IMG/VR virus record: IMGVR_UViG_3300023179_000009
Span: 310,001-374,000 of that record
Strand: one strand, 5' to 3'
DNA: 64,000 nucleotides
The notes under the pieces are model-generated. The model did no database searches, was not told the DNA's origin, and was given only the letters and a program-made list of their open reading frames with translations. This document shows, one piece after another, positions 11,511-50,577 of the stretch; the first letter of the stretch is position 1; each line of letters opens with the position of its first letter. The translations under genes were made by a program, and so were the position numbers.

Positions 11511-11511
11511 T

Positions 11512-21382: not shown

Positions 21383-21387
21383 TTTTT

Positions 21388-24335: not shown

Positions 24336-24368
24336 TTAGTTGATACCAACTAAGGACACAGTTTTATT

Positions 24369-24441: not shown

Positions 24442-24475
24442 CTGTCGGTTTTTCTTATCTTCTAAGAGAATCTAT

Positions 24476-28309: not shown

Positions 28310-28350
28310 TACCAACTAGGTTGTTGTTCTCTTTTACACAAAGGATTTAT

Positions 28351-28758: not shown

Positions 28759-28824
28759 TATTGTTTGATACCAACTAGGGGGAGTGTGAACAACACTCCC
28801 CCTAGTTCCTTTTAGGAGAAGACC

Positions 28825-30850: not shown

Positions 30851-30873
30851 GCTCATACCCGAAAGGAAAACAA

Positions 30874-33741: not shown

Positions 33742-33773
33742 ATACTAACTAGAGGACTGCTCAACTTTTAAAT

Positions 33774-33845
33774 GCCCCGTTCGTATAGAAGTTAGTATAT
33801 CGGGCTTTCATCCCGAAGACGCCGGAGCGTTACCGGCACGGGGTA
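33774..33845 (+). tRNA. trnE: tRNA-Glu(UUC) with non-canonical T loop
   Basis: GCCCCGT/ACGGGGT, TCGGG-CTTTCAT-CCCGA, T arm GCCGG-AGCGTTA-CCGGC. Confidence 0.8.
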
Positions 33846-33848
33846 CTT

Positions 33849-34454: not shown

Positions 34455-34532
34455 GCATATATAAGCCTGAGGAATTCAAAAAAAGTTGCCCGATACCAAC
34501 TAGAACACCAGTTCGGTACTCTGGAGTATGTC

Positions 34533-35123
34533 ATGCTTGTTATAGGTGATGTTCACGGTCATCATGCCGACTATCTCGACTTGATTGATAATGTCGAAAC
34601 TTCTGTGCAGGTCGGTGATTTTGGACTTAGTTGGGAAATACTAACTAAGGCTAATGTCGATCCAACAAAGCATCGTATCATTGGTGGCAATCATGATAAC
34701 TACTCTGTGGCTCATACCTTTCCTCATTATCTTGGGGATTTTGGCTTGGTCACTCACGGAGGAGTAACTTTCTTTTTCGTGAGAGGCGAGCGCAGCGTTG
34801 ACGCCCACCTGCGAACAGAAAACATTAGTTGGTGGCGTAACGAAGAACTTGACATGGCAACGGCATATAACGCTGTTGCGGCATATGAGGCATCTCAGCC
34901 TGATATTGTTATAAGTCACGGTTGTCCTGCGGATGTTCTTCCTTTTTTTGTAACCAATCCATCCAAGTATCATCCCAGCAGAACAGCACAGTTGCTCGAT
35001 GTGATGCTAGAGATTCATCGGCCACAGTTGTGGCTTTTTGGTCACCACCACACGAGTGAAATTCTTACAGATCGTGGCACAGTATTTCAGTGTCTCAACG
35101 AACTAGAAACTGTGAATATCTAA
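34533..35123 (+). CDS. Calcineurin-like metallophosphoesterase
   Basis: GDVHG, QVGDFG, GGNHD, SHG, FGHHH motifs. Confidence 0.9.
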   Translation: MLVIGDVHGHHADYLDLIDNVETSVQVGDFGLSWEILTKANVDPTKHRIIGGNHDNYSVAHTFPHYLGDFGLVTHGGVTFFFVRGERSVDAHLRTENISWWRNEELDMATAYNAVAAYEASQPDIVISHGCPADVLPFFVTNPSKYHPSRTAQLLDVMLEIHRPQLWLFGHHHTSEILTDRGTVFQCLNELETVNI

Positions 35124-35150
35124 TACCAACTAGGATATCAGGAGGACCAC

Positions 35151-38100
35151 ATGAAAGATCACGGTTGGACTAGGTGCAAAGATCAACTGCCCGAACCGGG
35201 CCAAATCGTTTATTACTTCGGGCCTTACATCGGCATTGGAATCGGCCGATTTGACCCGACGATACAAACTCAATGCTGTCACGAGGATGAAAATGGCCAC
35301 ATTGTTTACGAAGAAATGTCGCAGAAACTTATCGACATGATCAACCACAACAAGTTCATCAACAATAACTTTGGTGTGGTTGATGCTGATGATGCCCCCT
35401 TCTGGCGTGAATACGATGAAAAAGACGCCAAGGGTTGGTGCCCGATTCCTCCCGATTACATCACTCTCGAAGAAAGGTTGGAAAAAGATGCGCAACGATG
35501 AAAAGCCCCAGTTTGATCCTGATAGCGACGATGAGTACGACTATCTGAAGGAAAACTGGGTTCTCGGTGACGAACCTATGACCGAAGCCCAACGCCGAGA
35601 AAATGAAGCGTGGGATGAAGAGTGTCGCCGCAATAAGTGGTGATACTAACTAGGTGGGTGTTATCTTCACTTCACAGGAGTTTCAAATGGATCTTGCAAC
35701 CAGCAGCAATCTGAACGAACTGATCCGAAAGACAATCAAGCAAGAATGCGCTCCGGTAGATGTCCGTGCTCGATTTGTCGAGATGCTCGATGATTCATGG
35801 GCTGAGAATGATTTCCTCCGGACGTTTCATCTTACAGCCTCGACCGTAATCGAGGAATGTGATCCGACGATGTTTCAGCAGGAACTGCTGAACTTCACGG
35901 ACTCGTGCGATGATCTTATCGAGATCGACGAAGAGTATTACGACCGTGAGGCGGTAGAGTCTGTCAAGGCCGAACTGATTCAAGAGATCGAAAGCCTCTA
36001 ATACCAACTAGGAACAAGGTGAGTGAATCACTCACCTTGTTCCTACCTTTATGAAAGGAAGCGATTATGACTTTTGATCGTTGTTGTGAACTTGCCAATG
36101 AAGGTGTTCCAGGTGTGCTGATCGACTTTTGCGGCTATGAAGTGCCGCACAGCATCCACCGGCTCACGAAGAAAGTTCTTCGTCGCCTGAAGCGTGATGG
36201 CATCGTTGTGGTCAACTATGACGATAGTTTCGGTCGAGTTGCTGCCGAGGAACTTGAGGACATCGCCGGTGCGATTGGACTCACGTTCGCCCATGTGAGG
36301 AATCATCAGTTCGTCATCGCTGATGAGGACGGCGGCAAGATCAAGGCCATGGAACTCGAAAGTACCGATCAGGACTTCGAGAACACCTAATACCAACTAG
36401 GGGGGAGGTAACACTCCCCCCTAGTTTTTTTCGAAGGAACATCATGAACCTTTATTCCGCCGCCGATTACCACACAACAAAGTCCATGCACACTCTTTCG
36501 TGGATTTACGCCCACGGTGAAGCCGAAGATTTCATGCGTCATGATGTGCTTTTGACTCCTTATCCGGTGATTCGCCCGGAACCGGGACTGTATAGTGTCA
36601 CACTGCACAATCCTCAAGGTAAAGCCAAACAGGCTTTTATGTTCGTTTGGAAATATCAAGTTTCAGATGTCAGGGGGTTGGTTGTGCTTGGTGATGATCT
36701 CGAATCGGTGGATCACTGTTGTTCAATATTCAGAAAGGCGTTTGTCACTTTGTTTGATACCAACTAGAGCATTGTTCGATCACCCTCACTAAAAGGAATC
36801 AACATGATCAACGAAGCCTTCTTCAGTATCTGCCGGGATGCCAAGCCTGCTGTGAGCGGCTACGTCAGCCTGTATATGAATGTTCCCTACTACGGTGGCC
36901 CAGAGGAGGGCGGTTGGTGGGGCAGCGATACGGTGCTGGTGGCTCATCATCACTGTGGCAACGAAGTCGAAGCCGAGGCGGTCAAAATCAAGGTCGAGGA
37001 ATATGCTCGTGAACTGAGCGATGATGCCCGAAAGGATTTTGGTCGTGCTTGTCTCGCTCAGTGTGAATGGCTTGAAGCAAGGGGGCTCGATAGTGATAGC
37101 CTGCCCGAAGTGGACGGCGAGGTGAGTTACTTTGTGGTAGTTGAGGAAGTTCCGGGCGAACACGCCTCACGGGGTTGTCGTCACTACGAGTGATACCAAC
37201 TAGGCCGCTGTTCCTTCACACCAACCGAAAGGGAAACCATGATCATCAACGGAAAAGTTGAAACGATTGACGATTTCATCGCTATGGTTGATCGGGTAGT
37301 GAGTCGCAAGACTGGCATGAGCGTGCATGATCTTCCTGATTTCGCTTTTTGCGATTATTTCGAGGAAGATATGGATTACGAGGACGCCAAAGAAGCGGCC
37401 CGTGATTGTGCTTGTGAAATATTGGCCGATCTTGGTTTCGATGAAGACGAGTGATACCAACTAGATCGGTGTTCCTTCCCTCTATCTCTTGAAAGGAGAT
37501 TCATATGGATGAGCATGATATGCACATGGAAAGTATCCTGTGGCCGTGGATTGACGACGATTCACTGGATGTTCAGGACTATGACCCGAGTTGCGACCCT
37601 AGCGACGAGGACAACTATGACGATATGGACGGCGATCACGAGAGTGGTCTAGCCTCCGCCGGTTGGGGCACTGACGAAGATTATGGTTGCCATGGAAACG
37701 ACGAGTACTAATACCAACTAGGGGGGGTGTGGATGTGCCACACCCCCCCTAGTCCCTCAAATCCAGGAGAACGACATGAAGTTCGTCACGAAGTTTTTTA
37801 CGGATTGCATCGAGACGGTTGTTCGCAAGGTTCTTGCCGATGAGCAGTTCAAGAGCATGGTTGGCGAATCGGTCAAGACCCAGTTCGACAACCTCGACTA
37901 TGGACGACTCGCAGAAGAACTGCACGAGCGAGACGTTATCAACTACCGAGAACTCGCCAAGCACGTTGATGCTGACGAGATCGCTCAAAATGTCGATACC
38001 GGCGAAATCGAGAACAAGGTAGTCGAGCAGATTGATATGGACAGCGTCACTCAGGGTGTTGTCGATGCCATTGATACCGATGACATCGCAGAGCAGGTCA

Positions 38101-38449
38101 GGGAACATATCGAGATCGACTACAGCGAGATCGAGATCGACTATCAGGCACTTGGCCGTGCGTTGGTCGATCTGGCTGCGACCCGTAGGTAATACCAACT
38201 AGGGGGGAGGTAACACTCCCCCCTAGTTCCTTTTAGGAGTTTCAAATGGATCCGGTAGCAAACAAACTCGAACAAGTTAGCATCGCTCTTGAAATCGCCC
38301 GGATTTGGGACGATTGCAATGCTGATGGAACTCTCACAACCGGCCAAATGGAAGCGGTTGCCGATCTTGCCAATCGTTTGGCCGAGTTGGTAACGGCTCT
38401 TGCCGGGTGGGAGGATTGGAAAAGCCTCAAGTCCACCTACTGCCGGTAA
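35151..38449 (+). other. Array cargo CDS (35151-35501, ~35488-35643, ~35687-36001, 36067-36390, 36444-36767, 36804-37193, 37239-37454, 37505-37711, 37776-38192, 38246-38449)
   Basis: One ORF per motif interval; several are strongly acidic. Confidence 0.78.
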
Positions 38450-38510
38450 TACCAACTAGGGGAGTGTGAGAAAAACAAATCTCACACTCCCCTAGTTTGG
38501 AGGAAACAAC

Positions 38511-38990
38511 ATGAAGGTTCTGTTTCTTGATATCGACGGAGTTCTCAACACCCCAAAAATGCTTGGGCGTTTCGGTTTTGACTTTATTGACACTGTTCTT
38601 GTGGCTCTCGTGGCAAGAATCGTCAAAGAAACCGAGTGCAAAATCGTATTATCGTCAACATGGCGAATTGACGAAAAAGATCGGTTTGTTGCTACCCGTG
38701 AACTATCCGAGCATGGATTGACTATCCATGATTGCACCCCGGTAATTACCCGTAAGCCACCCGACGATCCATCTAATCTTCTTGACGAACTTTGGGAAAC
38801 ATGGAACTGGCCCAAGCGTCACGAAGAAATACAGTTATGGCTTGATCAAAATCCTGTATCTCGATTCGCTATTCTTGATGATCTTCAAGAGGCTTGTATT
38901 GAAGGATCGTTCTTCAAGACCGACGAGAATCGTGGCATAACTGTGGAGATTGCAGAAAAGATCATTCAACATCTGAATGATACCAACTAG
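38511..38990 (+). CDS. HAD-superfamily phosphatase (Swiss-Army-knife RNA-repair type)
   Basis: LFLDIDGVLN, IVLSSTWR, FAILDD. Confidence 0.82.
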   Translation: MKVLFLDIDGVLNTPKMLGRFGFDFIDTVLVALVARIVKETECKIVLSSTWRIDEKDRFVATRELSEHGLTIHDCTPVITRKPPDDPSNLLDELWETWNWPKRHEEIQLWLDQNPVSRFAILDDLQEACIEGSFFKTDENRGITVEIAEKIIQHLNDTN

Positions 38991-39035
38991 TAGCGTGTAG
39001 TCACTGTGGCTACAACACAACCCAAAGAGGAAATC

Positions 39036-39473
39036 ATGATCAACGTCGAAATGACGGTGCGTGAGGCGGTGGAACTGCTGCACAACCTGCCCGAAGGCAA
39101 CACGCTTCGAGAGCGAGTTTTCTCGGTTCTGGAATCGCAGGTAGGCGAGGGCAAGCGAACCCTCACACTCCACAGTTTTCCTGCGGAGCGAAAGATCGCC
39201 TGCATCAAAGCCGTTCGAAACGGTATGCAGTGGGGTCTGAAGGAGTCGAAGGATTGGGTCGAAGTTGTGCAAGGCGAACGGGTCTGCACGAATCCTCATG
39301 CCATCCGCACGGATGACTATTCGTGGAACCGTTGGGATGATAGTGAGCCGTGTTTGCCGCTTGAATACGAGTGGGTGAACGGCAAACCCAACACGCTCAC
39401 GGCTCCGACCGCCACGGTACTCCAGATGGCATCGGAAATGCGGGCTGTCGGTGCGGTGGTCACCACCGCTTGA
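39036..39473 (+). CDS. Protein containing a ribosomal bL12 C-terminal-like domain
   Basis: KIACIKAVRNGMQWGLKESKDWVE matches the KI.VIK.VR...GLKEAK..VE signature. Confidence 0.6.
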   Translation: MINVEMTVREAVELLHNLPEGNTLRERVFSVLESQVGEGKRTLTLHSFPAERKIACIKAVRNGMQWGLKESKDWVEVVQGERVCTNPHAIRTDDYSWNRWDDSEPCLPLEYEWVNGKPNTLTAPTATVLQMASEMRAVGAVVTTA

Positions 39474-39535
39474 TACAAACTAGGGGAGTGTAGGAAACAC
39501 CTACACTCCCCTAGTCTTTTTCTGAAAGGACCACA

Positions 39536-40356
39536 ATGATCATCCTCGATACCGACCTGAGCAACGCTCCGGGTTGCGTTTGCAAGATTCTGAACGAGCG
39601 GGAAACTCGGAGTATCCTAGTCCAAACCGACTATGATGCTCCGGGCGTGGCCCGCACGTTCGGCTGGGATATGACCGAAGTCCAGCCGCAGAACTACGGT
39701 TACTACGGGTTGAAGTGTCATCACCGTGGCACCGATGGCACGATTGACTGCCCCGATTGTGGCGTCAAGGCTGGCACGTTCATTGCAGCCGCCATCGAGT
39801 TTATCGACTCGAATGACGGTGCAACGGCGGAAGATCCGGGGTACTTCGAGTAATACCAACTAGCAGGGTGTGGGAAAAACCTACACCCTGCTAGTCCCTC
39901 TAACAGAAAGGTCGATCATGCGAACGATTCAAGATCTGGCAAAGGAAGCCCTCCAGGTTCAGGACGCCTGCAATCTTTCCGGTGTGGTTCACGGTTTCAG
40001 CCGTGCGATCACCGAGTTGCGGGAAATCCTCCGAACAACCGGCGGAGACCTGTCAACCGATGCGGTAAATACGCATCCCATCTGCAAGATGTGGGCAAGC
40101 AAGATCCACGATTTGACACGAATGGGATTTGGTGACGCTGATAGTTTCAGTGACGCCTTCTACCAGTGTTCAAATCTCTCTGAGGGAAAGACTGCCGCTT
40201 GATACCAACTAGGGGGGAGGTAACACTCCCCCCTAGTTCTTTTTCACGGAGGAAAAGATGTTTCGACGGATTGTAGGACAACTTGCCGATTGGCATTTTT
40301 TGGTTGAAGTTCTTGTTGGTTTCACAATCATGTGGTTCGTTTTGTTGATGTTGTGA
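39536..40356 (+). other. Array cargo CDS (39536-39853, ~39918-40202, 40258-40356 32-aa hydrophobic peptide)
   Basis: Motif-hairpin-RBS-ATG architecture. Confidence 0.7.
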
Positions 40357-40401
40357 TACCAACTAGGTGGATGTTCCAACCACAACCCCGGAGAACTCAC
40401 A

Positions 40402-40950
40402 ATGAGTTACACCGCAGCCCCTGCCTGTCAGTTGTTGGCAACACATTGTTGTTGCTGTGGTCGTCCGCTGGTCGATAGTGTTAGTGTCGAACTGGGCATC
40501 GGCCCGGAATGTCGCAAAGGCGATACTGGTGGTATCGACGCTGCCACCCAGGATGATTGCAACCGGCTTACTCGTTCCGCTGCTGTTGCCGCTCAGAGTG
40601 GTAACGTGGAGCGTGTTCGAGAGATTGCCGAAACAATCGAATCGCTCGGTCTTTCGGAACTGGCAAACAAGATTCGCAAGCGTTTCGTAAACGCCGAAAA
40701 GCGATGCAAAATCACCATCGTTGACAATGGTGATATGCTTATCGTTGAAACTCCTTTCCGTAGGAAAGATTCGAGTGGCTTCATCGAAGCGTGGCGAAAC
40801 ATTCCCGGCAGGCGGTATGACCGCAACCGTAACGCCAACGTGGTTCCTGTGAATCAGAAGCGCCAGTTATGGCAACTTCTGCAACGGTTCTTCCCCGGAG
40901 AGTTTGGCAAAGGGCCACAGGGAATATTCAGAATCCCTGAGGCTGCTTGA
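40402..40950 (+). CDS. DUF6011-like Zn-finger protein
   Basis: CCCCGRPLVDSVSVELGIGPEC. Confidence 0.6.
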   Translation: MSYTAAPACQLLATHCCCCGRPLVDSVSVELGIGPECRKGDTGGIDAATQDDCNRLTRSAAVAAQSGNVERVREIAETIESLGLSELANKIRKRFVNAEKRCKITIVDNGDMLIVETPFRRKDSSGFIEAWRNIPGRRYDRNRNANVVPVNQKRQLWQLLQRFFPGEFGKGPQGIFRIPEAA

Positions 40951-41001
40951 TACCAACTAGGTGAGCGTGAGGGTTGTTCCTCACGCTCACCTAGTCCTTT
41001 T

Positions 41002-41603
41002 ATGAAAGGGTTTATCGTGGCAACCAAAGTCAAAGTCACAAATCGAATCAAGCGGCAGATCCAGGCCGAGGCTCTCCGGGCATTGCACGACCGGGGACAC
41101 TTCACCGCCGCCGAGCGGCACGCCGGAATCGAGGCTGACCGCTGCATGTGTGGCGGTTTCGTGTGGGGCACGAATCTGCTCTGCAACGAGTGTGTGATGG
41201 AACTCGCCCGCAAGCAAAAGTAATACCAACTAGGGGAGTGTAGGAATCACCTACACTCCCCTAGTCTTTCAAAGAAAGGTTGACCATGCGAAAGATCGAA
41301 AAGAAAATGATCGAGGCGATTCAGAATCGCAAGGACATGAGCCTCAACAACACCGTGGTCAAGCACGGTACAGCCACCAGCGTTGTGTTTCTCCACAATC
41401 ATCCCATTTGCATTTTCATGTGGGCTGATAATGCGGTGGCTGTCAGCAATTGTGGCTGGTCAACGAACACCACCAAAAGCCGCCTGAATGCGGTTTTGGG
41501 TTCGTTTTGTGATACGGGGATTCACCAGCACAAGCATGTCTGGTACATGGGCAAGGAAGAGTTCCGCAACGGAACTCGTGTCCCGATGAAGCAGATCGCC
41601 TGA
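41002..41603 (+). other. Array cargo CDS (41002-41223; 41280-41603)
   Basis: Motif-hairpin-RBS architecture. Confidence 0.75.
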
Positions 41604-41667
41604 TACCAACTAGGGGAGTGTAGGAATCACCTACACTCCCCTAGTTCTTTTTCCAGAAAGGGAAAAC

Positions 41668-42129
41668 ATGAAACTCATCCTGATGCGTGGCGTGAGCGGC
41701 AGCGGCAAAAGCACGCTGGCCGAAAAGATTTGCAGCGAACAGGAATTTGCTGTAATTGTTTCAACCGATCACTATTTCATGGTCGATGGTGAATACCGAT
41801 TCGACCCGAAGCGTCTCGGTGAGTATCACTCCGCTAACGTGAACCGAACCGAACAGTTCATGGTTGAACGGTGTGCGTGTATCATCGTGGACAACACGAA
41901 CACACAAGCGTGGGAAATGAAACCCTACGTCGAGTTGGCCATGAAGCACGGCTACGCTATCGAAATCCATCAGCCCGATCCGGTCAGTTTCGAGGAACTG
42001 ATGCAGCGGCAGGCAAACCGGGCCGACAGCAACAAGGCTCTGCCCGCCGAAGTGGTAAAGCGGATGCTCGACCGATTCGAGCACGATGTGACAGTGGCAA
42101 AGATTCTCCAATCGAAGCGACCCTTCTGA
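41668..42129 (+). CDS. P-loop kinase, AAA_33 / polynucleotide-kinase (N4BP2-like) family
   Basis: LILMRGVSGSGKSTLA, VSTDHYF, IIVDNTN...EMKPY. Confidence 0.82.
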   Translation: MKLILMRGVSGSGKSTLAEKICSEQEFAVIVSTDHYFMVDGEYRFDPKRLGEYHSANVNRTEQFMVERCACIIVDNTNTQAWEMKPYVELAMKHGYAIEIHQPDPVSFEELMQRQANRADSNKALPAEVVKRMLDRFEHDVTVAKILQSKRPF

Positions 42130-42186
42130 TACCAACTAGAAGGAGTGTGATAAGCACTCCCCCTAGTTCTTTTTCCAGAAAGGAAC

Positions 42187-43286
42187 ATGATGGATCACGA
42201 ACAGGCCATGCGGAATGCCATGAAGCGTGTGATGACGTTCATGGATAGCCTCTCGCCGGGGAACAGTCCCCGTGCCACAACAACTGACAGCCCGATGATT
42301 CACTTCAATGGCTGGAATCGGTGGTGTGTCAAGTTCGACACACACAGCGGTAAAAACTATCACGCATTTGGTTCTACGCTCGTCGAAGCGTTCAATCGGT
42401 TGGTCGATGAACCAACCGTGTCTGATACCAACTAGACCAGTGTTCCCTTCCCCTCTTCAAAGGAGTCTGCCATGCAGATCAATTTCCTCGGTGAGAACTA
42501 CAACGTCGAGCCGGTTGCCATGCGATACACAGACGGCAATCTGGCAATTCAAGTTCTGCGTGCCGATGGGCCTTTCGGTATGCTCTCGACCAATGTCGAG
42601 GGTGTGCAACTCGCCCCGAACGAGTTCTGCGTGAAAACGTGGAGCGAGAACGATCCGTGGGCATTGGATCTTATCCGCCAGTGTCCGCAGTTCGAGAACA
42701 CTGGACGCACGTTCCGTAGCGGGTTCGTCAGCGGCCCGATCTACCGGATGGTTGGTTGATACCAACTAGATCGATACCGAACTACGGCCCTCGTCGTTCA
42801 AGACAGAAAGGACGCTGTAGTGTCATGCCAAAGCGGTGGCCACCGCACGGCAATCGTTGCCAAAGTACACGGCAACGATCAGCACACTACGGAAATGCGG
42901 GTGCGATACCCGCCGGGGTCAGCATACACTGTAGGCCAAAAGCCGAACAACGAGGCGTCTATCCCACGCCTACAACCCCGAAAGGGGAGAGAGTGTATGG
43001 GGTCTAATACCAACTAGGGGGACATGGGGAGACAACCCATGTCCCCCTAGTTCTTTTATGAAAGGCAAACATGGTTCCACGAGAAATGTATCGGTGGGAA
43101 TATTTCCATGCGATGGGCAACAACTGCCGATTGCATGGAATGTCATCTCACGATGCCCAAACCGTGATCGATAAGGCCGCTGGTTTCGGCAACGATTTCG
43201 AAAACTTCTGGACAGGATTTCTGTACGGCAGAAGTGATCAAATCGCTTCTTTGCCAAGCAAAGATTCCGTGGTCTGGGTTTTTTAG
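42187..43286 (+). other. Array cargo CDS (42187-42435; 42472-42759 DUF4313-like; 43071-43286)
   Basis: 42472 has LAIQ...PFGMLSTN...FCVKTWSEN. Confidence 0.65.
42770..43005 (+). ncRNA. Candidate structured non-coding RNA cassette
   Basis: No RBS-supported ORF; many nested stems (see findings). Confidence 0.5.
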
Positions 43287-43385
43287 TCTGTCACATTTCG
43301 ACAGGCCGTGCGTAATACCAACTAGAACGGTATCGAGAATGGCTCTCGACGCCCACAACCCTCCTGTCCAGAAAGGACAACTGTC

Positions 43386-43700
43386 ATGAAGTTCATCCTC
43401 AATGCGTTTTCTCTAAACATGATCGGCACATTTCCGGCGACCATCACGGTCGAGGAAGTCTCGACCCACGAAGCCTGTGTCGAGGCTCACGGTGTCACCA
43501 GTGGCGTCGGCCACCCCGATACGGCGGCGGTGTTCGCTTCGATTCTCGGTACGCCCGTTCCGATGAATCGTGCAACCGTCAGTCTCGTGTCTGGTGATCG
43601 TGTGCTGGTGGGCCAATACAGTGGCCCTCGTCTGCCCGAGGGTGCAACTACGCTGCCCGAGGGTGCCACGATCAAGTGGCTCGTCGTCTCTGTCAACTGA
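43386..43700 (+). CDS. acrIII-1: DUF1874 / AcrIII-1 cyclic-oligoadenylate ring nuclease homologue (anti-CRISPR type III)
   Basis: ILNAFSLNMI...SGVGHPDTA...PMNR...LVGQYSGPRLPEG: GH, NR and RLPEG signature of the STIV B116/SIRV1 gp29 family. Confidence 0.8.
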   Translation: MKFILNAFSLNMIGTFPATITVEEVSTHEACVEAHGVTSGVGHPDTAAVFASILGTPVPMNRATVSLVSGDRVLVGQYSGPRLPEGATTLPEGATIKWLVVSVN

Positions 43701-43771
43701 TACCAACTAGCAGGGTGTGGTGATGAGCCACACCCTGCTAGTCCTTCAACCCCCAACCCTGAAAGGCAATC

Positions 43772-44149
43772 ATGCCCTACACCGCTTGCGTCCTCGAAGA
43801 GTCATCCCGCACCACGCTCGTGGAGTGGATGTATTCCAATCACGAAGTGCCCGAGCACTTCGAAATCGTCGGCCACCACTGCACCGTCGATCTGAAGCCC
43901 ATCGCCAAAAGCATGGGCTGCGATCTGGATGGCCAGCGACACGAAATGCGTGTCGTTCGTTTCGGTCGTCTCGACGGCATCATGGCTGTCGAAGTCGAGA
44001 CGGTTGTTCCCAGCAAGAACGACCGCAAGCACATCACCTTGTGCTACGACAAGCCGAATGGCTGGAAACCGAAGCAGTCGAACGACATCGTGGAATGGAC
44101 TGACATCGAACCGTTCGTTCTGCACGGTGTCGTGAAGGAATGTGCGTGA
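43772..44149 (+). CDS. 2H phosphoesterase (RNA-repair type)
   Basis: Two HxT-like motifs: HHCTV and HITL. Confidence 0.7.
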   Translation: MPYTACVLEESSRTTLVEWMYSNHEVPEHFEIVGHHCTVDLKPIAKSMGCDLDGQRHEMRVVRFGRLDGIMAVEVETVVPSKNDRKHITLCYDKPNGWKPKQSNDIVEWTDIEPFVLHGVVKECA

Positions 44150-44212
44150 TACCAACTAGGGGGATGTGATGAAAGTCACATCCCACCTTTCCTTTTCACA
44201 AAAAGGCCGATC

Positions 44213-45325
44213 ATGAACACTGATTTTCAAATGATGGTCGAGGCGCAGGTGGGTGACAAAACGGTCACCGTTTATTGCGAAACCCATGCAGAAGCGTGGG
44301 CTGCGGAAAATGCCATCCGCAACATGGCACGACAGTTCGGCTTGCAAGTGGGCACGGTGACAATCACCGTCAACGACACACCACGGTGGCGAGTCGATAC
44401 AATCTGGCTCAATCCTCCATACAGTGTTGTGCAGGATCAGTGATACCAACTAGGGGGGTGTGAACAACACCCCCCTCTTCTCTTGAAAGGAGAACGACGA
44501 TGGAAAACGAAGGCCAGATGCGAAGTAGGACATGCACGTTCGTCAACAGAACGTACATGTTCGAACACATCGAAGAGGCACTGATGTTTGCTCCTCCGGA
44601 GCAGACGATCAGCATCGAGATTCTGCCAGATGGACGCTACAGTGTTACCGAAACGTGGCGGGATGCGGAGCCTGCCGACCGCAGACGGTTCGCCAGCATC
44701 TGCAATCGTGGCGGTAACTGATACCAACTAGGGGGACACGGGGAACAACCGTGTCCCCCTAGTTCCGTTTTCCCTCAAACCAGAGAGGCCATCATGACGA
44801 TCAAAGTTCAGATTCCGGGCCGAGTCACAGCCTCTGCCCTTGTCGAGTCCGGACTCGACGCTTCTAGCAACGGAGTGCTGACATTCCACGCTTTCAGCGA
44901 CGCCATGAAAGCGAGGGTGTTGGAACTGATTGCCGCAGGGCAACACGTGGTGGTCAAGGCCACCACCGAAGTGCCCCGAACCGGCGATTGGTTCGAGCCA
45001 GCACAGTGATACCAACTAGGTGGACACGAGGACACAACTCGTGTCCCCCTAGTTTCGTTTCTCCTAACCCCGGAGTTTTTCCATGAACGATACAATCAAA
45101 TGGCGAAACTTGCCCGCCCGCATGACCCCGAAGGTCGATCCCTCGTTCGATGAACTGTGTCGTGCGATGAAGAATCGTACACAGATCACGGTCATCGGAG
45201 CATGGGGCCATCCCATCACTGGCCTCGTCAACAAAATCGAGGCAGAGGGTGGTAGCGGTCGATGCTGGAACGTGACGATCAGTCACGGCATCCACACCAG
45301 CACGATCTTCGTCCGCACGGCGTGA
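44213..45325 (+). other. Array cargo CDS (44213-44443, 44500-44721, 44794-45009, 45083-45325)
   Basis: Each ends exactly on the TGA of a motif copy. Confidence 0.78.
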
Positions 45326-45393
45326 TACCAACTAGGGGGACACAGGACACAAGCCTGTGTCCCCCTAGGTTCGTTTCCACCCCGGAGGATCAC

Positions 45394-45945
45394 ATGATCC
45401 ACATCGCTAGTTTCGTTCGGCGTCAAACCGCCGACAGTCGGTTCAGCCACTGGACGCTGGACGACAATGCTCTCGTCCAAAGGATCGAAGCCGGTCTGCC
45501 CAATGCCAAACCCGGATACCGGGATGGCGTGGTGCTCGTGCCGGTCGATCCCGATGGCTTCTTCAGTGCCACGGTCACGCTGACCAACGGCCAAAAGCTG
45601 GTGGGCGAGTTCGCCAGCCGTCGCACCGGCGAAGAGCCTCGTAAGAGTCTCGCCGCCATCGGCCAGAAGCAGCCCGCCGGTACGGTGTGGGTCGTGCTCT
45701 ACGCCCACCACGTTCTCGCTGAGAAAAACGAGAACGAGACCGATGCCGACTGGGAAGTGGTCAGCGTCAACGCCAGCCCGAGCGTGGACGCTGAACCGGC
45801 TCCCATGCCGCCGGAAACGCTGATCGCCAACCACTTCGAGTTGGATGGCGGGACGGCGACGAAGATGAGCGACAGTGACTTCGTCGCATCGCTCAAGGCC
45901 AGCGTCCTCTACTGGAAGGACAAGGCACAGGTTCAGCCTGAGTGA
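45394..45945 (+). CDS. DUF3228-like protein
   Basis: FVRRQT, KPGYRDGVVLVPV, RRTGEEP, VVLYAHHVLAE, DWEVVSVNA, PM.PET, GGT. Confidence 0.7.
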   Translation: MIHIASFVRRQTADSRFSHWTLDDNALVQRIEAGLPNAKPGYRDGVVLVPVDPDGFFSATVTLTNGQKLVGEFASRRTGEEPRKSLAAIGQKQPAGTVWVVLYAHHVLAEKNENETDADWEVVSVNASPSVDAEPAPMPPETLIANHFELDGGTATKMSDSDFVASLKASVLYWKDKAQVQPE

Positions 45946-45979
45946 TACCAACTAGAACAGTGTCGAGGGGGATGGCAAC

Positions 45980-47405
45980 GTGCTGTCCCCCTCGACGGTT
46001 CGATTCCTTCAGGAGAACAAAATGGAGTTGCACATCTACCAGCTCGGGGGTCTCGACAACGACTCCCTGATCGGCATCGCTCACGACACGCACACGATGC
46101 GGTCGCTGATCGAACTGGCCGAACGCCGGGGTGCCACGGGCGTGAGCCTGCACGGCACCGTCCCGCACTTGCGGGAGAGCGTGAGCGGTGAGTTCACGCT
46201 GGACGAGGCCAAGCGGGAATACAACAGGGCCGTCGATGCGGTCAACGCCGTCATCATGGACGGCATCGACCCGGCGTTCGGGATGCAGCCCTGATACCAA
46301 CTAGGGGACTACAGGAACGGCCTGTAGTCCCCTAGTTGCGTTCCTGCCCCGGAGACTTCGCCATGATTTCTGAAGGGCCGAACGATCTTTTCATTGAAGA
46401 CGGCGAAAGCCTGTCCTCGATCATCGAACGGATCGGCAAGAAGTGGCCCGGTGCCACACTCGATCATTGCAAGATCGAGCACAACGACTGGTTCGAAAAA
46501 ATGATCGTGAAGTTGGTATCGCCTCAGTGATACCAACTAGGGGGACACGAGGACACAACTCGTGTCCCCCTAGGCTCGTTTTCCTCAACAACAGGAGCCT
46601 TCCCCATGAAGGTGCAAAAGAAAGTTTTCCGTTTCCACGCCAAGCGTGGGCAGCAGGATATGGTGATCGAACTGCTGCGGCAGTATGGTCAACCGTGGAC
46701 GACCACGAGCGCCGAGGGCATTCGTGTGTTCGTCGAGTTGCCCGAGGGCGTCAGCAAGCGGAGCGTCGATAAGATGCTGCGTGATGCTGGTGTGCCGGGT
46801 GCGGCATCATGCCGTAACGTCCCCATCGTGGACGTTGGATATGATGCCGGAAGGATGGAGCCTGCCCTTGAACGGCTCTATCGAGCCGGATACTTGAACC
46901 GAAAGGTCAAGATCTCGTGGGGCGGCACACGGGTCACCATCGGCTATCTTCGGGCAGAAGATTACTGCGACGGGCCGGGATTCGGCTTGTACGTAGACCC
47001 CGACAAAAAGATGAACGGCTACCAACTGCCGACATCGGCAGTTCAAGGAACACCGGGACAGAAACTGCCGTGGTGTTGATACCAACTAGGGGGACACAGG
47101 ACACAAGCCTGTGTCCCCCTAGGTTCGTTTCCCCTCCAACAAGAAAGATTCTTCACATGAAGAACTTCCTCAAGCTGCTCCTCTGCTCTGTTCTGGTCGG
47201 ATCGTGCTTCGCCGCCATCATCTGCGGCTACGTGATGGTCGGAACGGCCATGGGGTATTTCCACCCCAACTACGTTCCCGAAGCGGGTGAAACGCTTCTC
47301 GGTTTCTACGTCACGCTGTACACATGCAGCGTGGCCCCATTCCCGTTGCTGGTGCTGCTCATCAGTACCAGTACGGCCGTTGCGAGTGTGTTCGAGCATC
47401 GGTGA
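45980..47405 (+). other. Array cargo CDS (45980-46294, ~46363-46530, 46606-47079, 47157-47405 membrane protein)
   Basis: Each ends on a motif TGA. Confidence 0.75.
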
Positions 47406-47415
47406 TACCAACTAG

Positions 47416-47601
47416 AACACCACACGAGTGAACACCGTCTACGGCTGGTCATCCTCACCCCCTGCTTGCAGGCGTAGAGGGTGCCAAACCGGAAGCGTGG
47501 GCCGACATGCGGGTTCGATCCCCGTAGTCGTTTCCTGTCTGGTGCGGATCATAGGGGCTGATCGTAAATGCTCCGCCAGCCGTAGACGGCTTCACCTTGT
47601 T
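47416..47601 (+). ncRNA. Candidate structured RNA with a tRNA-like T arm
   Basis: 14-bp terminal stem 47435-47448/47576-47589; GCGGG-TTCGATC-CCCGT at 47509-47525. Confidence 0.5.
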
Positions 47602-47681
47602 AATACCAACTAGGTTGGTGTCGAGTGAGTCACAACGTGTGACACACTGACGTTCGGTAGGTTTCTTTCAGGAGGATCGCC

Positions 47682-48056
47682 ATGAGCAAGCCCAAGGTCA
47701 AGTCCGAGCCCGTCGCCCGCACCGCCAAGCCCAAGTCGGCCAAGCAGTTGGCCAAGCGGGCGGCGAACATCGCTGCCTGGGAAGCCCGCAACGCCGCCCT
47801 TCGGAACGGCACCTTCAAGGGCGTGGTCGAAAAGGCCGCTGAGGCGAAGGCCCGACACGTGGCCGAGCGGATGGCCGAGACGGAGAAGGCCCGCACGATG
47901 GTGGTGACCCACATGAGCCACCCGGTCTACGGCCAACGGCTCAGCCGTTTCCTCAACGGCAGCAAGGCCGACCCGAGGTTGCTGGCCAACGTGGTGATCC
48001 CCAACTGGATCAAGACGCAGGGTATCGTCGTCGATCACGTGCGACCCACCACGTGA
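47682..48056 (+). CDS. Basic Ala/Lys-rich hypothetical protein
   Basis: AGGAGG RBS, MSKPKVK start, high-GC codons. Confidence 0.75.
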   Translation: MSKPKVKSEPVARTAKPKSAKQLAKRAANIAAWEARNAALRNGTFKGVVEKAAEAKARHVAERMAETEKARTMVVTHMSHPVYGQRLSRFLNGSKADPRLLANVVIPNWIKTQGIVVDHVRPTT

Positions 48057-48306
48057 TCTGATACCAACTAGGGGGGTGTGAGTGATGCAAGTCGCTCACA
48101 CCCCCCAGCGGGTTGACGGCCCGCCATCCTGTCCCCGTCTCGACCCCTGAGTCATCCACACTCATACGCTTCGAGTGACTCAAGTCGGGGGATGGGATAA
48201 CTGGCCGTCGCCAGTCTTCCACCTAGTGATACCAACTAGGGTGGTGTCGAGTGAGTCACAACGTGTGACACACCGACGTTCGGTAGGTTTCTTTGGGAGT
48301 CATGCC

Positions 48307-48675
48307 ATGAGCAAGACGAAGAGCAAGGTCAAGCAGCCGGAGGCCGTGGTCGAGCAGCCGGTCGCCCCGGTCGAGACGAAGAGCATCGCTTGGCCGGTCG
48401 AGGCCGAGAAGGAACTGCTCTCCTCCGGTGGCTACATCAGCGGCGGTCGTTTCTATCTGCCGATGAATCGTGCGGCGGGTACGTGCGAGTACACGAGCAA
48501 GGCTGGTCGCACGGCGACCTACTGCATCTTCCGGGCCGACACGAACGGCTACAACTTGCTGCCCATCAGCAAGAGTGGCAAGGTCGCTCACAGCGACATC
48601 AAGCAGAACGGCAAGTACCTCAACGTGGGCTTCCGTGTCAGCAGCGAACGTGTCAGCAAGGTCGTGATGCGGTAG
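48307..48675 (+). CDS. Hypothetical protein; shares leader and N-terminal style with 47682
   Basis: GGGAG RBS, MSKTKSKVK start. Confidence 0.75.
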   Translation: MSKTKSKVKQPEAVVEQPVAPVETKSIAWPVEAEKELLSSGGYISGGRFYLPMNRAAGTCEYTSKAGRTATYCIFRADTNGYNLLPISKSGKVAHSDIKQNGKYLNVGFRVSSERVSKVVMR

Positions 48676-48735
48676 TGATACCAACTAGGGGGGAGCGTGG
48701 TGAAGAGCCACGCTCCCCCCGACTGTCGAACGGAG

Positions 48736-48770
48736 TGCCGCAGGGTCGAGCGATGACCCTGCGGCACTTT
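48736..48770 (+). terminator. Intrinsic terminator near the array end
   Basis: AGTGCCGCAGGGTC-N7-GACCCTGCGGCACT-TTT. Confidence 0.6.
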
Positions 48771-49098
48771 TCGAAACTCAGAAACTCTGAGTGATACCAA
48801 CTAGAGGGGTGGGTACCCTATGCCACTGCTGGCGGATACCGCACCACCCTATTGTTTATAACCCTTTAATTTTTTATTTTTATCTAATAGGGTTTTGTTT
48901 TTCAAGAACTCTGCGGCAAAAATTTCCGCCGCCGAATTTTTCTCACCCTCTATTAGGCTCAAAAAATTATTAAAAGCCGTTTTCTGTAAAAATCGCCGTT
49001 AAAAATTTTTGCAAGTACTACTATGATTATAATGAAGACTTAAAAGTATTTTATTTCGCTTTAAAATTTGTAAAATAATTAAAAATATAAGGACAATT

Positions 49099-50577
49099 AT
49101 GGATAAAAATACAAAAAAAAATACTAGTAATAACAAAAATAAAAAAGGTTTAGATTTTAGAACTTTATCTTTTTCTTTAGTTTCATTGGGGGGTTTCTAT
49201 AGAGATTACACTAAAGGACAAGTTCAACTTCCGTCTCATCAAAATCCCAGATTTTTAGCTGGGGGGTGGAACGATAGAAAAAAGAAAAAATGGATAAATC
49301 GAATTAAAAGAGTGGCAAGTGATAAGAATCTTCCATCAAATCAAAAAGCAATAGGGGGAGTTATAACAACATATCAAATTGAAAAGAACAACTCCCAAAA
49401 TATGTCTGGAAATATTCAAGAACCAAAATTCATCAATGACGGCGCACATAGGGCAATACACGCAATTAAGGATTATTTAGAAAAAACAAAACCAGACCTC
49501 AAATTAAAGAAAAAAAACTTGAAAAAATTCAACCAACAGCAAAAAAATTATGAAAAATTTTTAAGTATGTTAGATGAAGTTTTAATTGGAGAAGAGTTCA
49601 AACTTTACAAAGATGAAGATGCCGCCATGCAGGACTTTGTAAGCCTCAACACGGAAGGTTCTCGTGCCACGGCTTATGAAATTTTAACTGGTATAATGGA
49701 AGGAAAAATAGAAAAACACTGGGGTATTGGTAAAGATAAAATTCTTTCTTTAAAAGAAAGAATAGAAAATGTCACACCAGACAGATTGATCTTCTTGGGA
49801 TTTAAACCAAAAGATGTTGGGGCAATATTGATTGGAGATAGCGATGTTAAAAAGAAACAAAAACAAAACACCATAAGAGATAGTCGTGCTTCTTTTCTAA
49901 GATTTGTGAACAAAAATATTTTCCAATCACCTTATTTCGGAATTTCTAGAAGCCGTTTTTCAGACAATACTGGACGAGGGCAAAGCGGACATAAAAAAAT
50001 AGAACCAGAACTATTTGATTTTTTTAAAAATAATAGCTTGGACTATTGCTTACAACAAATTGAGAAATGGGAGTGTTTTGCTCAAGATGCTTTTGCTTTC
50101 TATAAGCAAATTTGTAAACAAAAAGAATTTCAAGAATTTGAAATAAATTATGATGAAAATGCTATTCGGTGGTGGTTTGCAGCATTTATTTATATAAATA
50201 ATAATAATTTAGGCATTGAATTTGCAAGAAAATTCACTGAGTCTTTTCTTATCAAGCAAAAAAACGGACAACAATTAACTTATACAAATAAAAAAGGACA
50301 AATAAAAGTATTAAATTTACAATTACAAAAATTTAATAATACTTATGTAACAAGTCTTGGTTTGGATGCTATAAACCTTGAAGAAAAATCAAACAAACCT
50401 TGTAGGAAAAAGCCAAATTTAAAACCAGTGGCTGGTTTTCATAATAGTCATATAAAAAGTTTTGCAAAACACGGAGAAGGCGAAACTGTGCCCGAAAACG
50501 CAATAGAAAACAGGGCACGAGGAGTAAAAGATATGACTGTGGTTGAAAAACAAAGAATTTTGTTTGCTAATGTGTAA
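49099..50577 (+). CDS. DUF262 (ParB/Srx-like) + C-terminal HNH-like protein, GmrSD/SspE-like architecture
   Basis: LPSHQ..R...W...KKWI, IGGVI, FINDGAHR; C-terminal HNSHIKSFAKHGEGETVPENAIENRARG. Confidence 0.55.
   Translation: MDKNTKKNTSNNKNKKGLDFRTLSFSLVSLGGFYRDYTKGQVQLPSHQNPRFLAGGWNDRKKKKWINRIKRVASDKNLPSNQKAIGGVITTYQIEKNNSQNMSGNIQEPKFINDGAHRAIHAIKDYLEKTKPDLKLKKKNLKKFNQQQKNYEKFLSMLDEVLIGEEFKLYKDEDAAMQDFVSLNTEGSRATAYEILTGIMEGKIEKHWGIGKDKILSLKERIENVTPDRLIFLGFKPKDVGAILIGDSDVKKKQKQNTIRDSRASFLRFVNKNIFQSPYFGISRSRFSDNTGRGQSGHKKIEPELFDFFKNNSLDYCLQQIEKWECFAQDAFAFYKQICKQKEFQEFEINYDENAIRWWFAAFIYINNNNLGIEFARKFTESFLIKQKNGQQLTYTNKKGQIKVLNLQLQKFNNTYVTSLGLDAINLEEKSNKPCRKKPNLKPVAGFHNSHIKSFAKHGEGETVPENAIENRARGVKDMTVVEKQRILFANV

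What the first reader, a model, noticed from the sequence alone, without database searches (positions are those of the whole stretch)
48689..49098. Array terminus: ORF-less triple-hairpin unit, last motif, then an AT-rich leader-like segment
Seen: the unit 48689-48792 has no gene, only three stems (GGGGGGAGCGTGG/CCACGCTCCCCCC, a 14-bp terminator-like stem, ACTCAGA/TCTGAGT). The final motif (48793) is followed by AGGGGTGG-GTACCC...CCACCCT and then ~250 bp of very AT-rich non-coding DNA. Inference: candidate insertion point (attI/leader analogue), replication origin, or physical genome end/terminal-repeat junction.
Basis: partly seen in the sequence, partly recalled or inferred. Interest (0 to 1): 0.62.

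Follow-up and report, generated by a model that had tools for sequence, protein, structure and literature searches.

The report
End of a phage gene-cassette array
This is the conserved, gene-free closing module of a 93-kb run of about 110 small genes, each behind the same 13-letter control box, in a giant T4-like lake phage. The boundary is real and unusual, but nothing supports an integron-style insertion site, a genome end or an assembly error.

Summary
Window 48689-48792 has no ORF and folds into three perfect stems (z = -9.2). The last box is at 48793-48804, followed by a bulged hairpin and 248 bp of 27% GC non-coding DNA.

The window lies in a 458.8-kb T4-like freshwater phage (Gp23 capsid hit). 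The box T-R-ATACCAACTAG occurs about 110 times, all on one strand, over 93 kb. It usually supplies the stop codon of the gene before it and lies about 36 nt (median) before the next start codon. A G-run/C-run stem-loop often follows it. This matches PeSL promoter/terminator cassettes of T4-type hyperplastic regions, but with a single-block box that is not sigma-70-like.

Seven or more independent assemblies bridge the GC/AT junction. Whole-cassette gains and losses occur at boxes all along the array. The phage has no tyrosine or serine recombinase. The AT-rich DNA has ordinary backbone composition. So attI, physical end and artefact are not supported.

Five lineages share a conserved ~220-nt non-coding island (48776-48998). 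Cassettes differ upstream of it and genes differ downstream. I read it as the array's closing regulatory module. A T4-type promoter-plus-AT-rich origin remains an untested rival.

The 32-to-60% GC gradient that ends here is unexplained.

The parts
7318..48804 (+). The part of the box array inside the window: 83 copies of T-R-ATACCAACTAG (up to 1 mismatch), each ahead of a small gene, a tRNA gene or an ORF-less unit. The array starts at genome position 265,395, upstream of the window.
48307..48675 (+). Last protein-coding cassette (122 aa, no family hit). Its leader and first codons duplicate those of the 124-aa gene at 47682-48056.
48676..48688 (+). Penultimate box (TGATACCAACTAG).
48688..48720 (+). 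Stem-loop 1 (13-bp G-run/C-run stem), the usual post-box hairpin. The relative carries a matched one-base deletion in both arms.
48734..48775 (+). Stem-loop 2 (14-bp perfect stem) plus ACTTTTCG. It is terminator-like and identical in the 501-kb relative.
   Evidence: it fails the U-tract rule of the scan
48776..48792 (+). Stem-loop 3 (ACTCAGA aac TCTGAGT). Its CAGAAAC core is conserved in all five termini and marks the left edge of the conserved island.
48792..48804 (+). Last box of the array.
48805..48861 (+). Terminal bulged hairpin. The 5' arm varies (two forms). The 3' block GGATACCGCACCACCCTATTGT.TATAA (48834-48861) is identical in five lineages except for one T/A position at 48856. It includes CTATTG, which pairs back to the AACTAG of the last box and is an imperfect inverted copy of the box.
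   Evidence: (I3)
48851..49098 (.). AT-rich non-coding DNA with backbone composition. It holds conserved blocks at 48916-48942, 48961-48979 and 48988-48998. Lineages diverge right after 48998.
49099..50577 (+). First backbone gene (492 aa, no family or solved relative). It varies between strains: absent from the 501-kb relative and from a minor form in run X2, and replaced by other DNA in L178, L179 and X6.
48072..48227 (+). A second ORF-less, highly structured unit two cassettes upstream (z = -7.5). It is conserved in the relative and in L177 and L179; L178 was seen only for its 3' end.

Best explanation
The stretch is the downstream boundary of a one-directional hyperplastic region of about 93 kb in a T4-like freshwater megaphage.

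SHOWN. About 110 small genes and tRNA genes are each preceded by the same 13-nt box. The box usually provides the stop codon of the gene before it. Towards the end of the array it is fused to a G-run/C-run stem-loop. Relatives differ by whole units whose breakpoints lie exactly at the box. The terminus is contiguous DNA in many independent assemblies. A ~220-nt non-coding island (stem 3, last box, terminal hairpin, first ~150 nt of the AT-rich DNA) is conserved while the gene content on both sides varies.

INFERRED. The box is a phage-specific promoter of the single-block, -10-like kind, probably read by host RNA polymerase with one of the three phage sigma-like proteins. The stem-loops stop or attenuate transcripts coming from upstream, as in PeSL cassettes of T4-type phages. 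Recombination between the repeated boxes and hairpins shuffles cassettes. The ORF-less triple-hairpin unit is then the untranslated tail of the last cassette, which either stacks transcription stops or makes a short structured RNA of about 80 nt. The last box with its inverted partner closes the array and insulates the differently regulated AT-rich backbone. The conserved AT-rich blocks would be control signals for whatever gene follows.

Nothing supports an integron-type attI, a genome end or an assembly artefact.
For: T4-like phage: Gp23 capsid E = 9e-87 and a large terminase 73 kb away. Box statistics: 114 copies on + against 3 on - genome-wide, 110 of them within 260-359 kb.

Promoter-like placement:
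- The first box sits in a divergent intergenic region 41 nt before the first gene of the block. No gene lies upstream of it on that strand, and the second gene of the block is a sigma-70 region 2 protein.
- Boxes lie about 20-30 nt before tRNA-Lys and tRNA-Glu.
- The median distance from box end to start codon is 36 nt.
- There is no -35-like block. A pyrimidine (79%) then purine (90%) pair sits exactly 7 nt after the box, which is the spacing from a -10 element to a transcription start.
- Backbone genes show other upstream words.

Stem-loops: they follow the box in nearly all units after 36 kb, with stems that begin at AACTAG and end at CTAGTT plus a T-rich tail.

PeSL parallels: upstream stop codon, promoter, G-run/C-run stem-loop, SD and start codon; hyperplastic region; differences between relatives associated with the motifs (PMC2839356; PMC4122927). 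Cassette differences from the 501-kb relative break exactly at the box.

A more distant relative, LR756511.1 (capsid 83% aa identity), has the same architecture with another box, TAAAGCTGTAC. There are 56 copies in 19 kb, the box also lies before genes on the other strand, and hairpins lie upstream of the box.

Terminus: strong structure and a compensatory deletion in stem 1. A terminator-like hairpin also follows the last gene in the L176, L178 and L179 termini. The island is conserved.

Contiguity: X2 record 6 and X6 record 31 bridge the junction, as do L130, L131, L132, L176, L178 and L179.
Against: There is no RNA evidence: no listed RNA run holds this DNA. Promoter and terminator activities are therefore inferred from layout only.

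The box does not resemble any promoter consensus I can name, and no phage RNA polymerase was found.

Stem 2 has only four T's after it and fails the simple terminator scan. The T-rich tail after the terminal hairpin is missing from the L176, L178 and L179 forms because of a 29-nt gap.

A plain terminator would not need 220 nt of conserved sequence, and variable DNA on both sides hints at an extra role. In hairpin-bearing units a transcript starting 7 nt after the box would lack the 5' arm. That fits the PeSL logic but is untested.
Confidence: 0.55

Rival explanations
1. The island is a T4-type replication origin. The last box fires a transcript into the AT-rich non-coding DNA, where it forms a persistent R-loop that primes leading-strand synthesis, as at T4 oriF and oriG.
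For: T4 oriF and oriG need only about 100 bp: a phage-controlled promoter plus a downstream A+T-rich unwinding element (PMC3016281). Here the last box is followed by a long non-coding stretch, 294 nt to the next credible gene against a median of 36 nt, at 27% GC. The non-coding island is conserved in five lineages while the flanking genes vary. It holds two direct copies of AAAAAT..CGCCG (starting at 48918 and 48988; conserved blocks).
Against: Cumulative GC skew has no extremum at the junction. The AT content is the backbone norm. There is no iteron array. No replication genes lie nearby. The promoter function of the box is itself only inferred. The first ~60 nt of the AT-rich stretch are not conserved in three lineages.
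Confidence: 0.15
2. The last box and the island are a privileged entry gate for new cassettes, a functional analogue of attI that uses an unknown recombinase or recombination at the box. New GC-rich units would enter here and drift away and ameliorate, which would explain the GC gradient.
For: A conserved platform sits next to a variable array. GC3 rises smoothly towards the end (Spearman 0.79, n = 60). Boxes and hairpins are most perfect near the end. In L176, L178 and L179 the 131/132-aa homologue is the last gene, so the window carries three extra units (48061-48793) right next to the last box. Divergence jumps across the junction from 72% to 94.5% nt identity.
Against: No tyrosine or serine recombinase is present in the record, and the flanking proteins have no recombinase signature. 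Between the two close relatives the terminal five units are the best-conserved part, and turnover is internal. Units specific to the relative have the GC of their position, not a uniform donor GC. Breakpoints occur at any box. Cassettes have no attC-type inverted repeats. No close donor homologues were found for the cassettes tested.
Confidence: 0.1
3. The ORF-less units are genes for small structured RNAs. Transcripts would start after the boxes at 48676 and 48792 (and at 48059), and these RNAs, not termination, would be the selected function.
For: Structure is extreme (z = -9.2 and -7.5). There is a box in front and a terminator-like hairpin behind. The units are conserved in relatives, with a compensatory change in stem 1 and the terminal 27-nt block identical in five lineages but for one position. 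The same box precedes tRNA genes.
Against: There is no Rfam match even at E up to 5 and no RNA data. The triple-hairpin unit is absent from L176-type termini. Conservation is no higher than in neighbouring coding units.
Confidence: 0.12
4. The junction is a physical genome end, a terminal-repeat junction or a packaging start.
For: The composition break is abrupt. An inverted box pair sits at the junction.
Against: Contigs from many samples run through it. It is interior in the 458.8-kb record and lies about 9.6 kb inside the 501-kb record. The record has no end repeats. The terminase gene is 73 kb away. T4 genomes are circularly permuted without fixed ends (PMC3016281).
Confidence: 0.04
5. The join between a GC-rich and an AT-rich genome is a chimeric assembly.
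For: GC drops from 60% to 30% within a few bases. Contig depth is higher on the array side.
Against: Identical junctions appear in independent studies and assemblers. The same box runs from the 35% GC part into the 60% GC part of the array. The depth difference is explained by several strain forms that diverge after 48998.
Confidence: 0.01

Closest known systems
PeSL (promoter-early stem-loop) regulatory cassettes of T4-type phages: RB49/phi1, T4/PST, KVP40/nt-1 (PMC2839356, PMC4122927)
   Same: The phage is T4-type. A repeated intergenic module runs from the upstream stop codon through a promoter-like motif and a G-run/C-run stem-loop to the SD and start codon. The modules are concentrated in a hyperplastic region of small ORFan genes. 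Differences between close relatives are bounded by the modules. Hairpin modules are shared between non-adjacent units.
   Different: The motif is a single 13-nt block, not a sigma-70 -35/-10 pair. There are about 110 copies in one 93-kb co-directional run, against about 50 scattered copies. The identical core is only 13 nt, against about 100 nt of similarity. A steep GC gradient is present. A conserved closing island is present. Promoter, terminator and mini-circle activities are untested here.
PmSL (middle-mode promoter stem-loops) of vibriophage nt-1 (PMC4122927)
   Same: These are PeSL-like cassettes built on a phage-controlled promoter class rather than a host-type one.
   Different: PmSLs carry a MotA box (TGCTT) plus a -10 box. 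No such boxes are found here.
T4 late promoters (TATAAATA, read by the gp55 sigma-like factor); from my own knowledge of T4 transcription
   Same: It is a single short block at the -10 position without a -35 element, read through a phage-encoded sigma-like protein. This phage encodes three sigma-70 region 2 proteins.
   Different: The sequence is unrelated. The genes served are small accessory genes and tRNAs, not virion genes. The assignment of a sigma to the box is inference.
Integron platform (intI, attI, Pc) with attC cassettes
   Same: A conserved platform sits next to a one-directional array of small, unrelated, strain-variable genes bounded by a repeated site.
   Different: There is no integrase. 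There are no attC inverted core sites. Every unit has its own promoter-like box. Transcription runs towards the platform, not away from it. Turnover occurs at any box.
T4 oriF/oriG R-loop origins (PMC3016281)
   Same: A phage-specific promoter-like element is followed by A+T-rich untranslated DNA within about 100-250 bp.
   Different: There is no functional evidence. The AT content is not above background. No skew signal is present.

Membership tests
PeSL-type regulatory cassettes | Host phage belongs to the T4 superfamily | tested here: met
   Pfam Gp23 capsid hit, E = 9e-87, at genome 442 kb. The best isolate hits are T4-like cyanophage capsids.
PeSL-type regulatory cassettes | Repeated intergenic module spanning the upstream stop codon, a motif, SD and start codon, concentrated among small ORFan genes | tested here: met
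   In 63 of 83 units the stop codon lies inside the box. The median distance to the start codon is 36 nt. Only 2 paralogous pairs exist among about 95 proteins, and most of those scanned lack family hits.
PeSL-type regulatory cassettes | Motif is a sigma-70-like -35/-10 promoter | tested here: not met
   The logo shows one 13-nt block and no information from -50 to -7 relative to the box. The sequence is unlike TTGACA/TATAAT.
PeSL-type regulatory cassettes | Attached stem-loop, often poly-G / loop / poly-C | tested here: met
   Hairpins of -20 to -45 kcal/mol start at the box in most units from 28.7 kb on and in nearly all after 36 kb.
PeSL-type regulatory cassettes | Insertions, deletions and replacements between close relatives are bounded by the modules | tested here: met
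   Breakpoints against the 501-kb relative lie exactly at the box, and hairpin modules are swapped separately.
PeSL-type regulatory cassettes | Demonstrated promoter and terminator activity; mini-circles | not testable with these tools
   No RNA run holds the DNA. The one 'goes back' joint in contigs is explained by repeated hairpins.
Integron (attI platform) | IntI-type tyrosine recombinase next to the site | tested here: not met
   PF00589 and PF00239 are absent from the whole record while the controls ring. The neighbouring proteins have no such domains.
Integron (attI platform) | Cassettes end in attC sites with inverse core sites (RYYYAAC ... GTTRRRY) | tested here: not met
   Complementarity stops at AACTAG/CTAGTT, and many units have no hairpin at all.
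Integron (attI platform) | New cassettes enter only next to the platform | tested here: inconclusive
   Turnover is internal between close relatives. Terminal units do differ in L176, L178 and L179. No outgroup is available to polarise gains.
T4-type R-loop origin | Phage-controlled promoter followed by an A+T-rich unwinding element | tested here: inconclusive
   The layout fits, but promoter function is inferred and 27% GC is the backbone norm.
T4-type R-loop origin | Supports replication or R-loop formation | not testable with these tools
   This needs infected cells. GC skew shows nothing, but not all T4 origins show skew (PMC3016281).
Physical genome end / terminal repeat | Molecules end at the site; sequence is not bridged or is repeated at the other end | tested here: not met
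   The site is bridged in X2 and X6 and in six other contigs. The record has no end repeats. Raw-read pile-ups could not be examined because only contigs were available.
Intrinsic terminator (stem 2) | G+C-rich stem followed by a U-tract | tested here: inconclusive
   The stem is 14 bp and perfect, but only four T's follow it and the consensus scan does not report it.

The most novel reading that the evidence does not exclude
The conserved island would be the fixed anchor of a directional cassette-accretion system in T4-like megaphages. New GC-rich, box-flanked units would be added or duplicated beside the last box without a dedicated integrase, then drift away while their composition decays to the 33% GC backbone. 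The 32-to-60% GC, GC3 and skew gradient would then be a built-in record of acquisition order. The cassettes include likely counter-defence genes.
Probability: 0.12. Interest if true: 0.85.

Novelty: new variant of a known kind. Interest (0 to 1): 0.5.

Why it matters
If the reading is right, this phage lineage has carried the PeSL principle much further than described: one phage-specific control box governs about a fifth of a 459-kb genome and also serves as the seam for cassette shuffling. That gives three things. It gives a ready-made map of about 110 independently switched accessory genes, including a DUF1874/B116-type protein (the family of viral ring nucleases, from my own knowledge). It gives a testable pairing between a box and one of three phage sigma-like proteins, with a sister phage that uses a different box. 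It gives a natural system for studying how huge phages gain and lose genes. The closing island is a compact, conserved 220-nt element whose function (insulator, origin or small RNA) can be tested directly. I found no published description of the smooth GC gradient that ends at it.

Tried and rejected
- Single-subunit phage RNA polymerase (PF00940) and multisubunit polymerase domain PF00623: no hit in the record. For PF00940 the controls did not ring either, so that blank is weak.
- Rfam at gathering and at E up to 5 over the terminus: only noise.
- Sigma-70 promoter and terminator scan of 47.3-49.4 kb: weak matches only. The promoter-like count (4) was somewhat above the shuffle mean (1.4 +/- 1.1); the terminator count was not above it.
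- K-mers of the AT-rich segment: only low-complexity words recur in the genome.
- Exact-pattern scans gave nothing useful. Box plus G-run in viral contigs: 0 hits. A 14-mer: single chance hits only. Terminal pattern in metagenome contigs: only the source contig. The 22-nt invariant block in viral contigs: 0 hits. Box plus G-run in prokaryote genomes: four single chance hits.
- A 465-kb contig hit by the 14-mer is unrelated: 4 against 4 matches, below control.
- The 492-aa gene had no relatives in viral contigs, Pfam, PHROGs or PDB.
- The sigma protein had no match in isolate phages.
- The record behind L130 could not be opened as a genome. I walked along it with exact-protein look-ups instead.
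- Joints and loose ends at boxes in the contig lay-out are mostly other array units aligning through the shared box and hairpins. They are not recombinants.
- A scan for boxes followed by long non-coding DNA was confounded by spurious ORFs.
- Literature searches for the box sequence and for a GC gradient in phage arrays found nothing relevant.

Full report
**What is there.**
- Window 48689-48792 has no ORF longer than 19 codons.
- It contains three perfect stems: 48688-48700/48708-48720, 48734-48747/48755-48768 (followed by ACTTTTCG), and 48776-48782/48786-48792.
- RNA folding of 48676-48850 gives z = -9.2 against shuffles.
- The last copy of GATACCAACTAG is at 48793-48804, and no + strand copy follows it.
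- It is followed by a bulged hairpin (AGGGGTGG ... CCACCCT) and 248 bp of non-coding DNA up to the ATG at 49099.
- GC falls from about 60% to about 30% within a few bases.

**Context.**
The window is positions 310,001-374,000 of a single 458,813-bp virus record from a lake metagenome, which CheckV rates 91% complete. The phage is T4-like. It has a Gp23 capsid hit at E = 9e-87 and a large terminase at 431.6 kb. It has no rRNA and no RNA polymerase domain, but it encodes three sigma-70 region 2 proteins.

The box T-R-ATACCAACTAG occurs 114 times on the + strand and 3 times on the - strand. Of these, 110 copies lie between 265 and 358.8 kb, with density rising towards the end. The finding is therefore the end of an array of about 93 kb, not of a local repeat.

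**What the box is.**
- In 48 of 83 units in the window, the TGA or TAA of the box is the stop codon of the preceding ORF. In 15 more, the TAG of the box is that stop codon.
- The next start codon lies a median of 36 nt after the box, behind an SD sequence.
- The box also precedes tRNA-Lys and tRNA-Glu by 20-30 nt.
- The first box (genome 265,395) stands in a divergent intergenic region, 41 nt before the first gene of the co-directional block. It has no gene upstream on that strand. The second gene of the block is a sigma-like protein. This argues against a purely 3'-end signal.
- The logo shows a single 13-nt block and nothing at a -35 distance. The next five positions are purine-rich. A pyrimidine (79%) then purine (90%) pair follows exactly 7 nt after the box, which is the spacing between a -10 element and a transcription start.
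- From about 17 kb on, and almost always after 36 kb, the box is fused to a G-run/loop/C-run stem whose base is AACTAG/CTAGTT, followed by a T-rich tail.
- A transcript starting 7 nt after the box would lack the 5' arm of that stem. The stem could then stop RNA coming from upstream without stopping the RNA made at its own box.

All of this is inference from layout. No RNA run holds this DNA.

**Closest known system.**
This is the architecture of PeSLs (promoter-early stem-loops) of T4-type phages. A PeSL runs from the upstream stop codon through a promoter and a poly-G/poly-C stem-loop to the SD and start codon. PeSLs are concentrated among ORFan genes of hyperplastic regions and mediate modular shuffling. 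A middle-promoter variant (PmSL) is also known (PMC2839356; PMC4122927). The sigma-70-like promoter, a defining feature of PeSLs, is not met here. I therefore file the array as a new variant, not a member.

**Relatives.**
- A 501,346-bp JGI contig is collinear with window 14.8-60 kb at 80-96% nt identity. The two differ by whole units, and every breakpoint examined lies exactly at the box. Hairpins are exchanged as separate modules.
- Turnover is densest at 41.6-47.6 kb. The last five units plus the terminus (47593-49008) are the best-conserved block at 95.9%, with no change at all in 48734-48797.
- Stem 1 carries a matched one-base deletion in both arms.
- A 10-kb ENA contig has a tandem duplication of the unit pair 47603-48228.
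- A more distant phage, LR756511.1 (595 kb, capsid 83% aa identity), lacks the box but has the same kind of array with a different one, TAAAGCTGTAC. It has 56 copies in 19 kb. The TAA of the box again serves as a stop codon. Hairpins lie upstream of the box. GC is 50-55% there against a 41% backbone. The same box also lies before genes on the other strand.
- Only 2 of about 95 array proteins are shared between the two phages.
- The flanks of the terminus show no synteny with LR756511.1.

**The terminus in five lineages.**
Homologues (62-70% aa) of the 124-aa cassette gene led to short contigs from other samples. Three of them (L176, L178, L179) reach the end of the array.
- In those three, the homologue is the last gene. 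It is followed by a variable, internally compensated hairpin, the conserved CAGAAAC element, the last box and a different 5' arm.
- Then comes a 27-nt block, GGATACCGCACCACCCTATTGT.TATAA, identical in all five but for one position.
- Then comes AT-rich DNA with three conserved blocks.
- In all five, AACTAG of the last box pairs with CTATTG of this block, which is an imperfect inverted copy of the box.
- Beyond 48998 the lineages diverge into at least four continuations. The window and L176 have the 492-aa gene. The 501-kb relative has a deletion down to about 50.6 kb (to 50645), and a minor form in X2 skips 48998-50625. L178 has other DNA. L179 and X6 have yet another.
- Across the junction, L176 is 72% identical to the window on the array side and 94.5% on the AT-rich side.

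So a non-coding island of about 220 nt (48776-48998) is conserved between variable cassettes and variable backbone genes.

- Artefact or physical end. Unitigs of X2 (48244-48979) and X6 (48738-48978), from different studies, bridge the junction without a difference. So do L130, L131, L132, L176, L178 and L179. The junction is interior in both large contigs. The record has no end repeats. T4 genomes are circularly permuted (PMC3016281). Raw-read pile-ups could not be checked because only contigs were on hand.
- attI analogue. The record has no tyrosine or serine recombinase. The neighbours carry no recombinase domain. There are no attC-type sites. The window does carry three extra units next to the last box compared with L176-type termini, so change near the end is not excluded.
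- Origin. The layout resembles T4 oriF/oriG, a promoter plus an A+T-rich unwinding element. But cumulative skew shows nothing. The 27.2% GC equals the backbone intergenic median of 27.8%. There are no iterons beyond two copies of AAAAAT..CGCCG. This idea stays open.

**Conclusion.**
My best reading (0.55) is that this is the closing regulatory module of a PeSL-like array.
- The ORF-less unit is the untranslated, stop-rich tail of the last cassette, or possibly a short structured RNA.
- The last box with its inverted partner insulates the array from the backbone.
- The AT-rich DNA is ordinary intergenic DNA carrying conserved control blocks.
- Cassette turnover happens by recombination at boxes anywhere in the array.

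**Unexplained.**
GC3 of cassette genes climbs from about 0.4 to 0.7-0.9 towards the end (Spearman 0.79, n = 60). GC2 rises (0.51) and GC skew falls (-0.54). The spread within bins stays constant. Units found only in the relative have the GC of their position. The cassettes tested have no close homologues in isolate phages, and the most GC-rich one has kin only in the same kind of array. Either an age gradient with amelioration or a position-dependent mutation or conversion bias would fit. I could not separate them.

Noticed in passing
window 11000-48850 (genome 321-358.8 kb): A smooth compositional gradient runs along the array. GC rises from 33% to 60% and GC3 of cassette genes from about 0.4 to 0.7-0.9 (Spearman 0.79). 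GC skew falls to zero. Composition then drops abruptly to 30% GC. LR756511.1 shows a weaker version (50-55% against 41%). The cause is unknown.
   Followed up: partly
window 8868-9123: Group I intron (Rfam RF00028, 70 bits) inside the AT-rich part of the array region. It overlaps the 3' end of the ORF at 8449-9015.
   Followed up: no
window 9843-9918, 10783-10857, 24255-24335, 24369-24442, 33774-33846: Five tRNA genes (Leu-CAA, Ile-TAT, Asn-GTT, Lys-TTT, Glu-TTC) lie inside the array. Three (Leu, Lys, Glu) have a box 20-90 nt upstream. All five decode A/T-rich codons, not the GC-rich codons of the terminal cassettes. A further tRNA-like sequence follows the box at 23833.
   Followed up: partly
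window 43386-43700: This cassette is a DUF1874 / STIV B116-like protein (Pfam E = 8e-9, PHROG E = 6e-19). Its best isolate hits are archaeal viruses and a Thermoanaerobacterium phage. From my own knowledge this is the family of viral ring nucleases (AcrIII-1), which suggests counter-defence cargo.
   Followed up: partly
window 41668-42129; 40402-40950; 39006-39473; 45262-45945: Other cassettes with family hits: AAA_33 / polynucleotide-kinase-like ATPase (one of only two array genes shared with LR756511.1), DUF6011, a ribosomal L7/L12 C-terminal-like domain, and DUF3228.
   Followed up: no
window 49009-50644 and 54418-56643: The 492-aa gene and the 717-aa DUF5122 beta-propeller gene are missing from the 501-kb relative. 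A minor form in run X2 skips 48998-50625, with 9 other letters in between.
   Followed up: partly
window 47590-47668 vs 48216-48294; 47679-47709 vs 48304-48334; locus L131: The 124-aa and 122-aa genes share a 79-nt leader (90% identity) and their first codons, but the rest of the genes is unrelated. An ENA contig carries a tandem duplication of 47603-48228. This suggests that units arise by duplication followed by replacement of the gene body.
   Followed up: partly
window 45325/47079; 45009/46530; 36390/38192/40202; 39473/41223/41603; 32534/32866: Post-box hairpins are identical or nearly so between non-adjacent units. This is a sign of conversion or module exchange among units.
   Followed up: no
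LR756511.1 positions 1-19,500 (L144): A 595-kb relative has an analogous array with another box (TAAAGCTGTAC) and a longer conserved leader. It ends at a convergent junction with a hairpin, about 150 nt of AT-rich DNA and a structured GC-rich element. Its contig begins inside or at the start of the array.
   Followed up: partly
genome 277156-278781 (L127:7156-8781): A 541-aa ORF with Cas12f1-like TNB and IS605 OrfB HTH domains (TnpB-like) lies inside the box-bearing block. The block also holds an SNF2 helicase and a PcfJ-like protein.
   Followed up: no
window 45300-51200 in runs X2, X3, X5: Contig word depth is 2-6 times higher on the array side than downstream of 48979. This is probably because several strain forms share the array end but diverge after 48998. 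GC bias is not excluded.
   Followed up: partly
upstream regions of genes outside genome 255-359 kb: Words enriched before backbone genes include TATATATA-type words and CATAAATA / ATAAATAC, reminiscent of the T4 late promoter TATAAATA. The array box is absent there.
   Followed up: no
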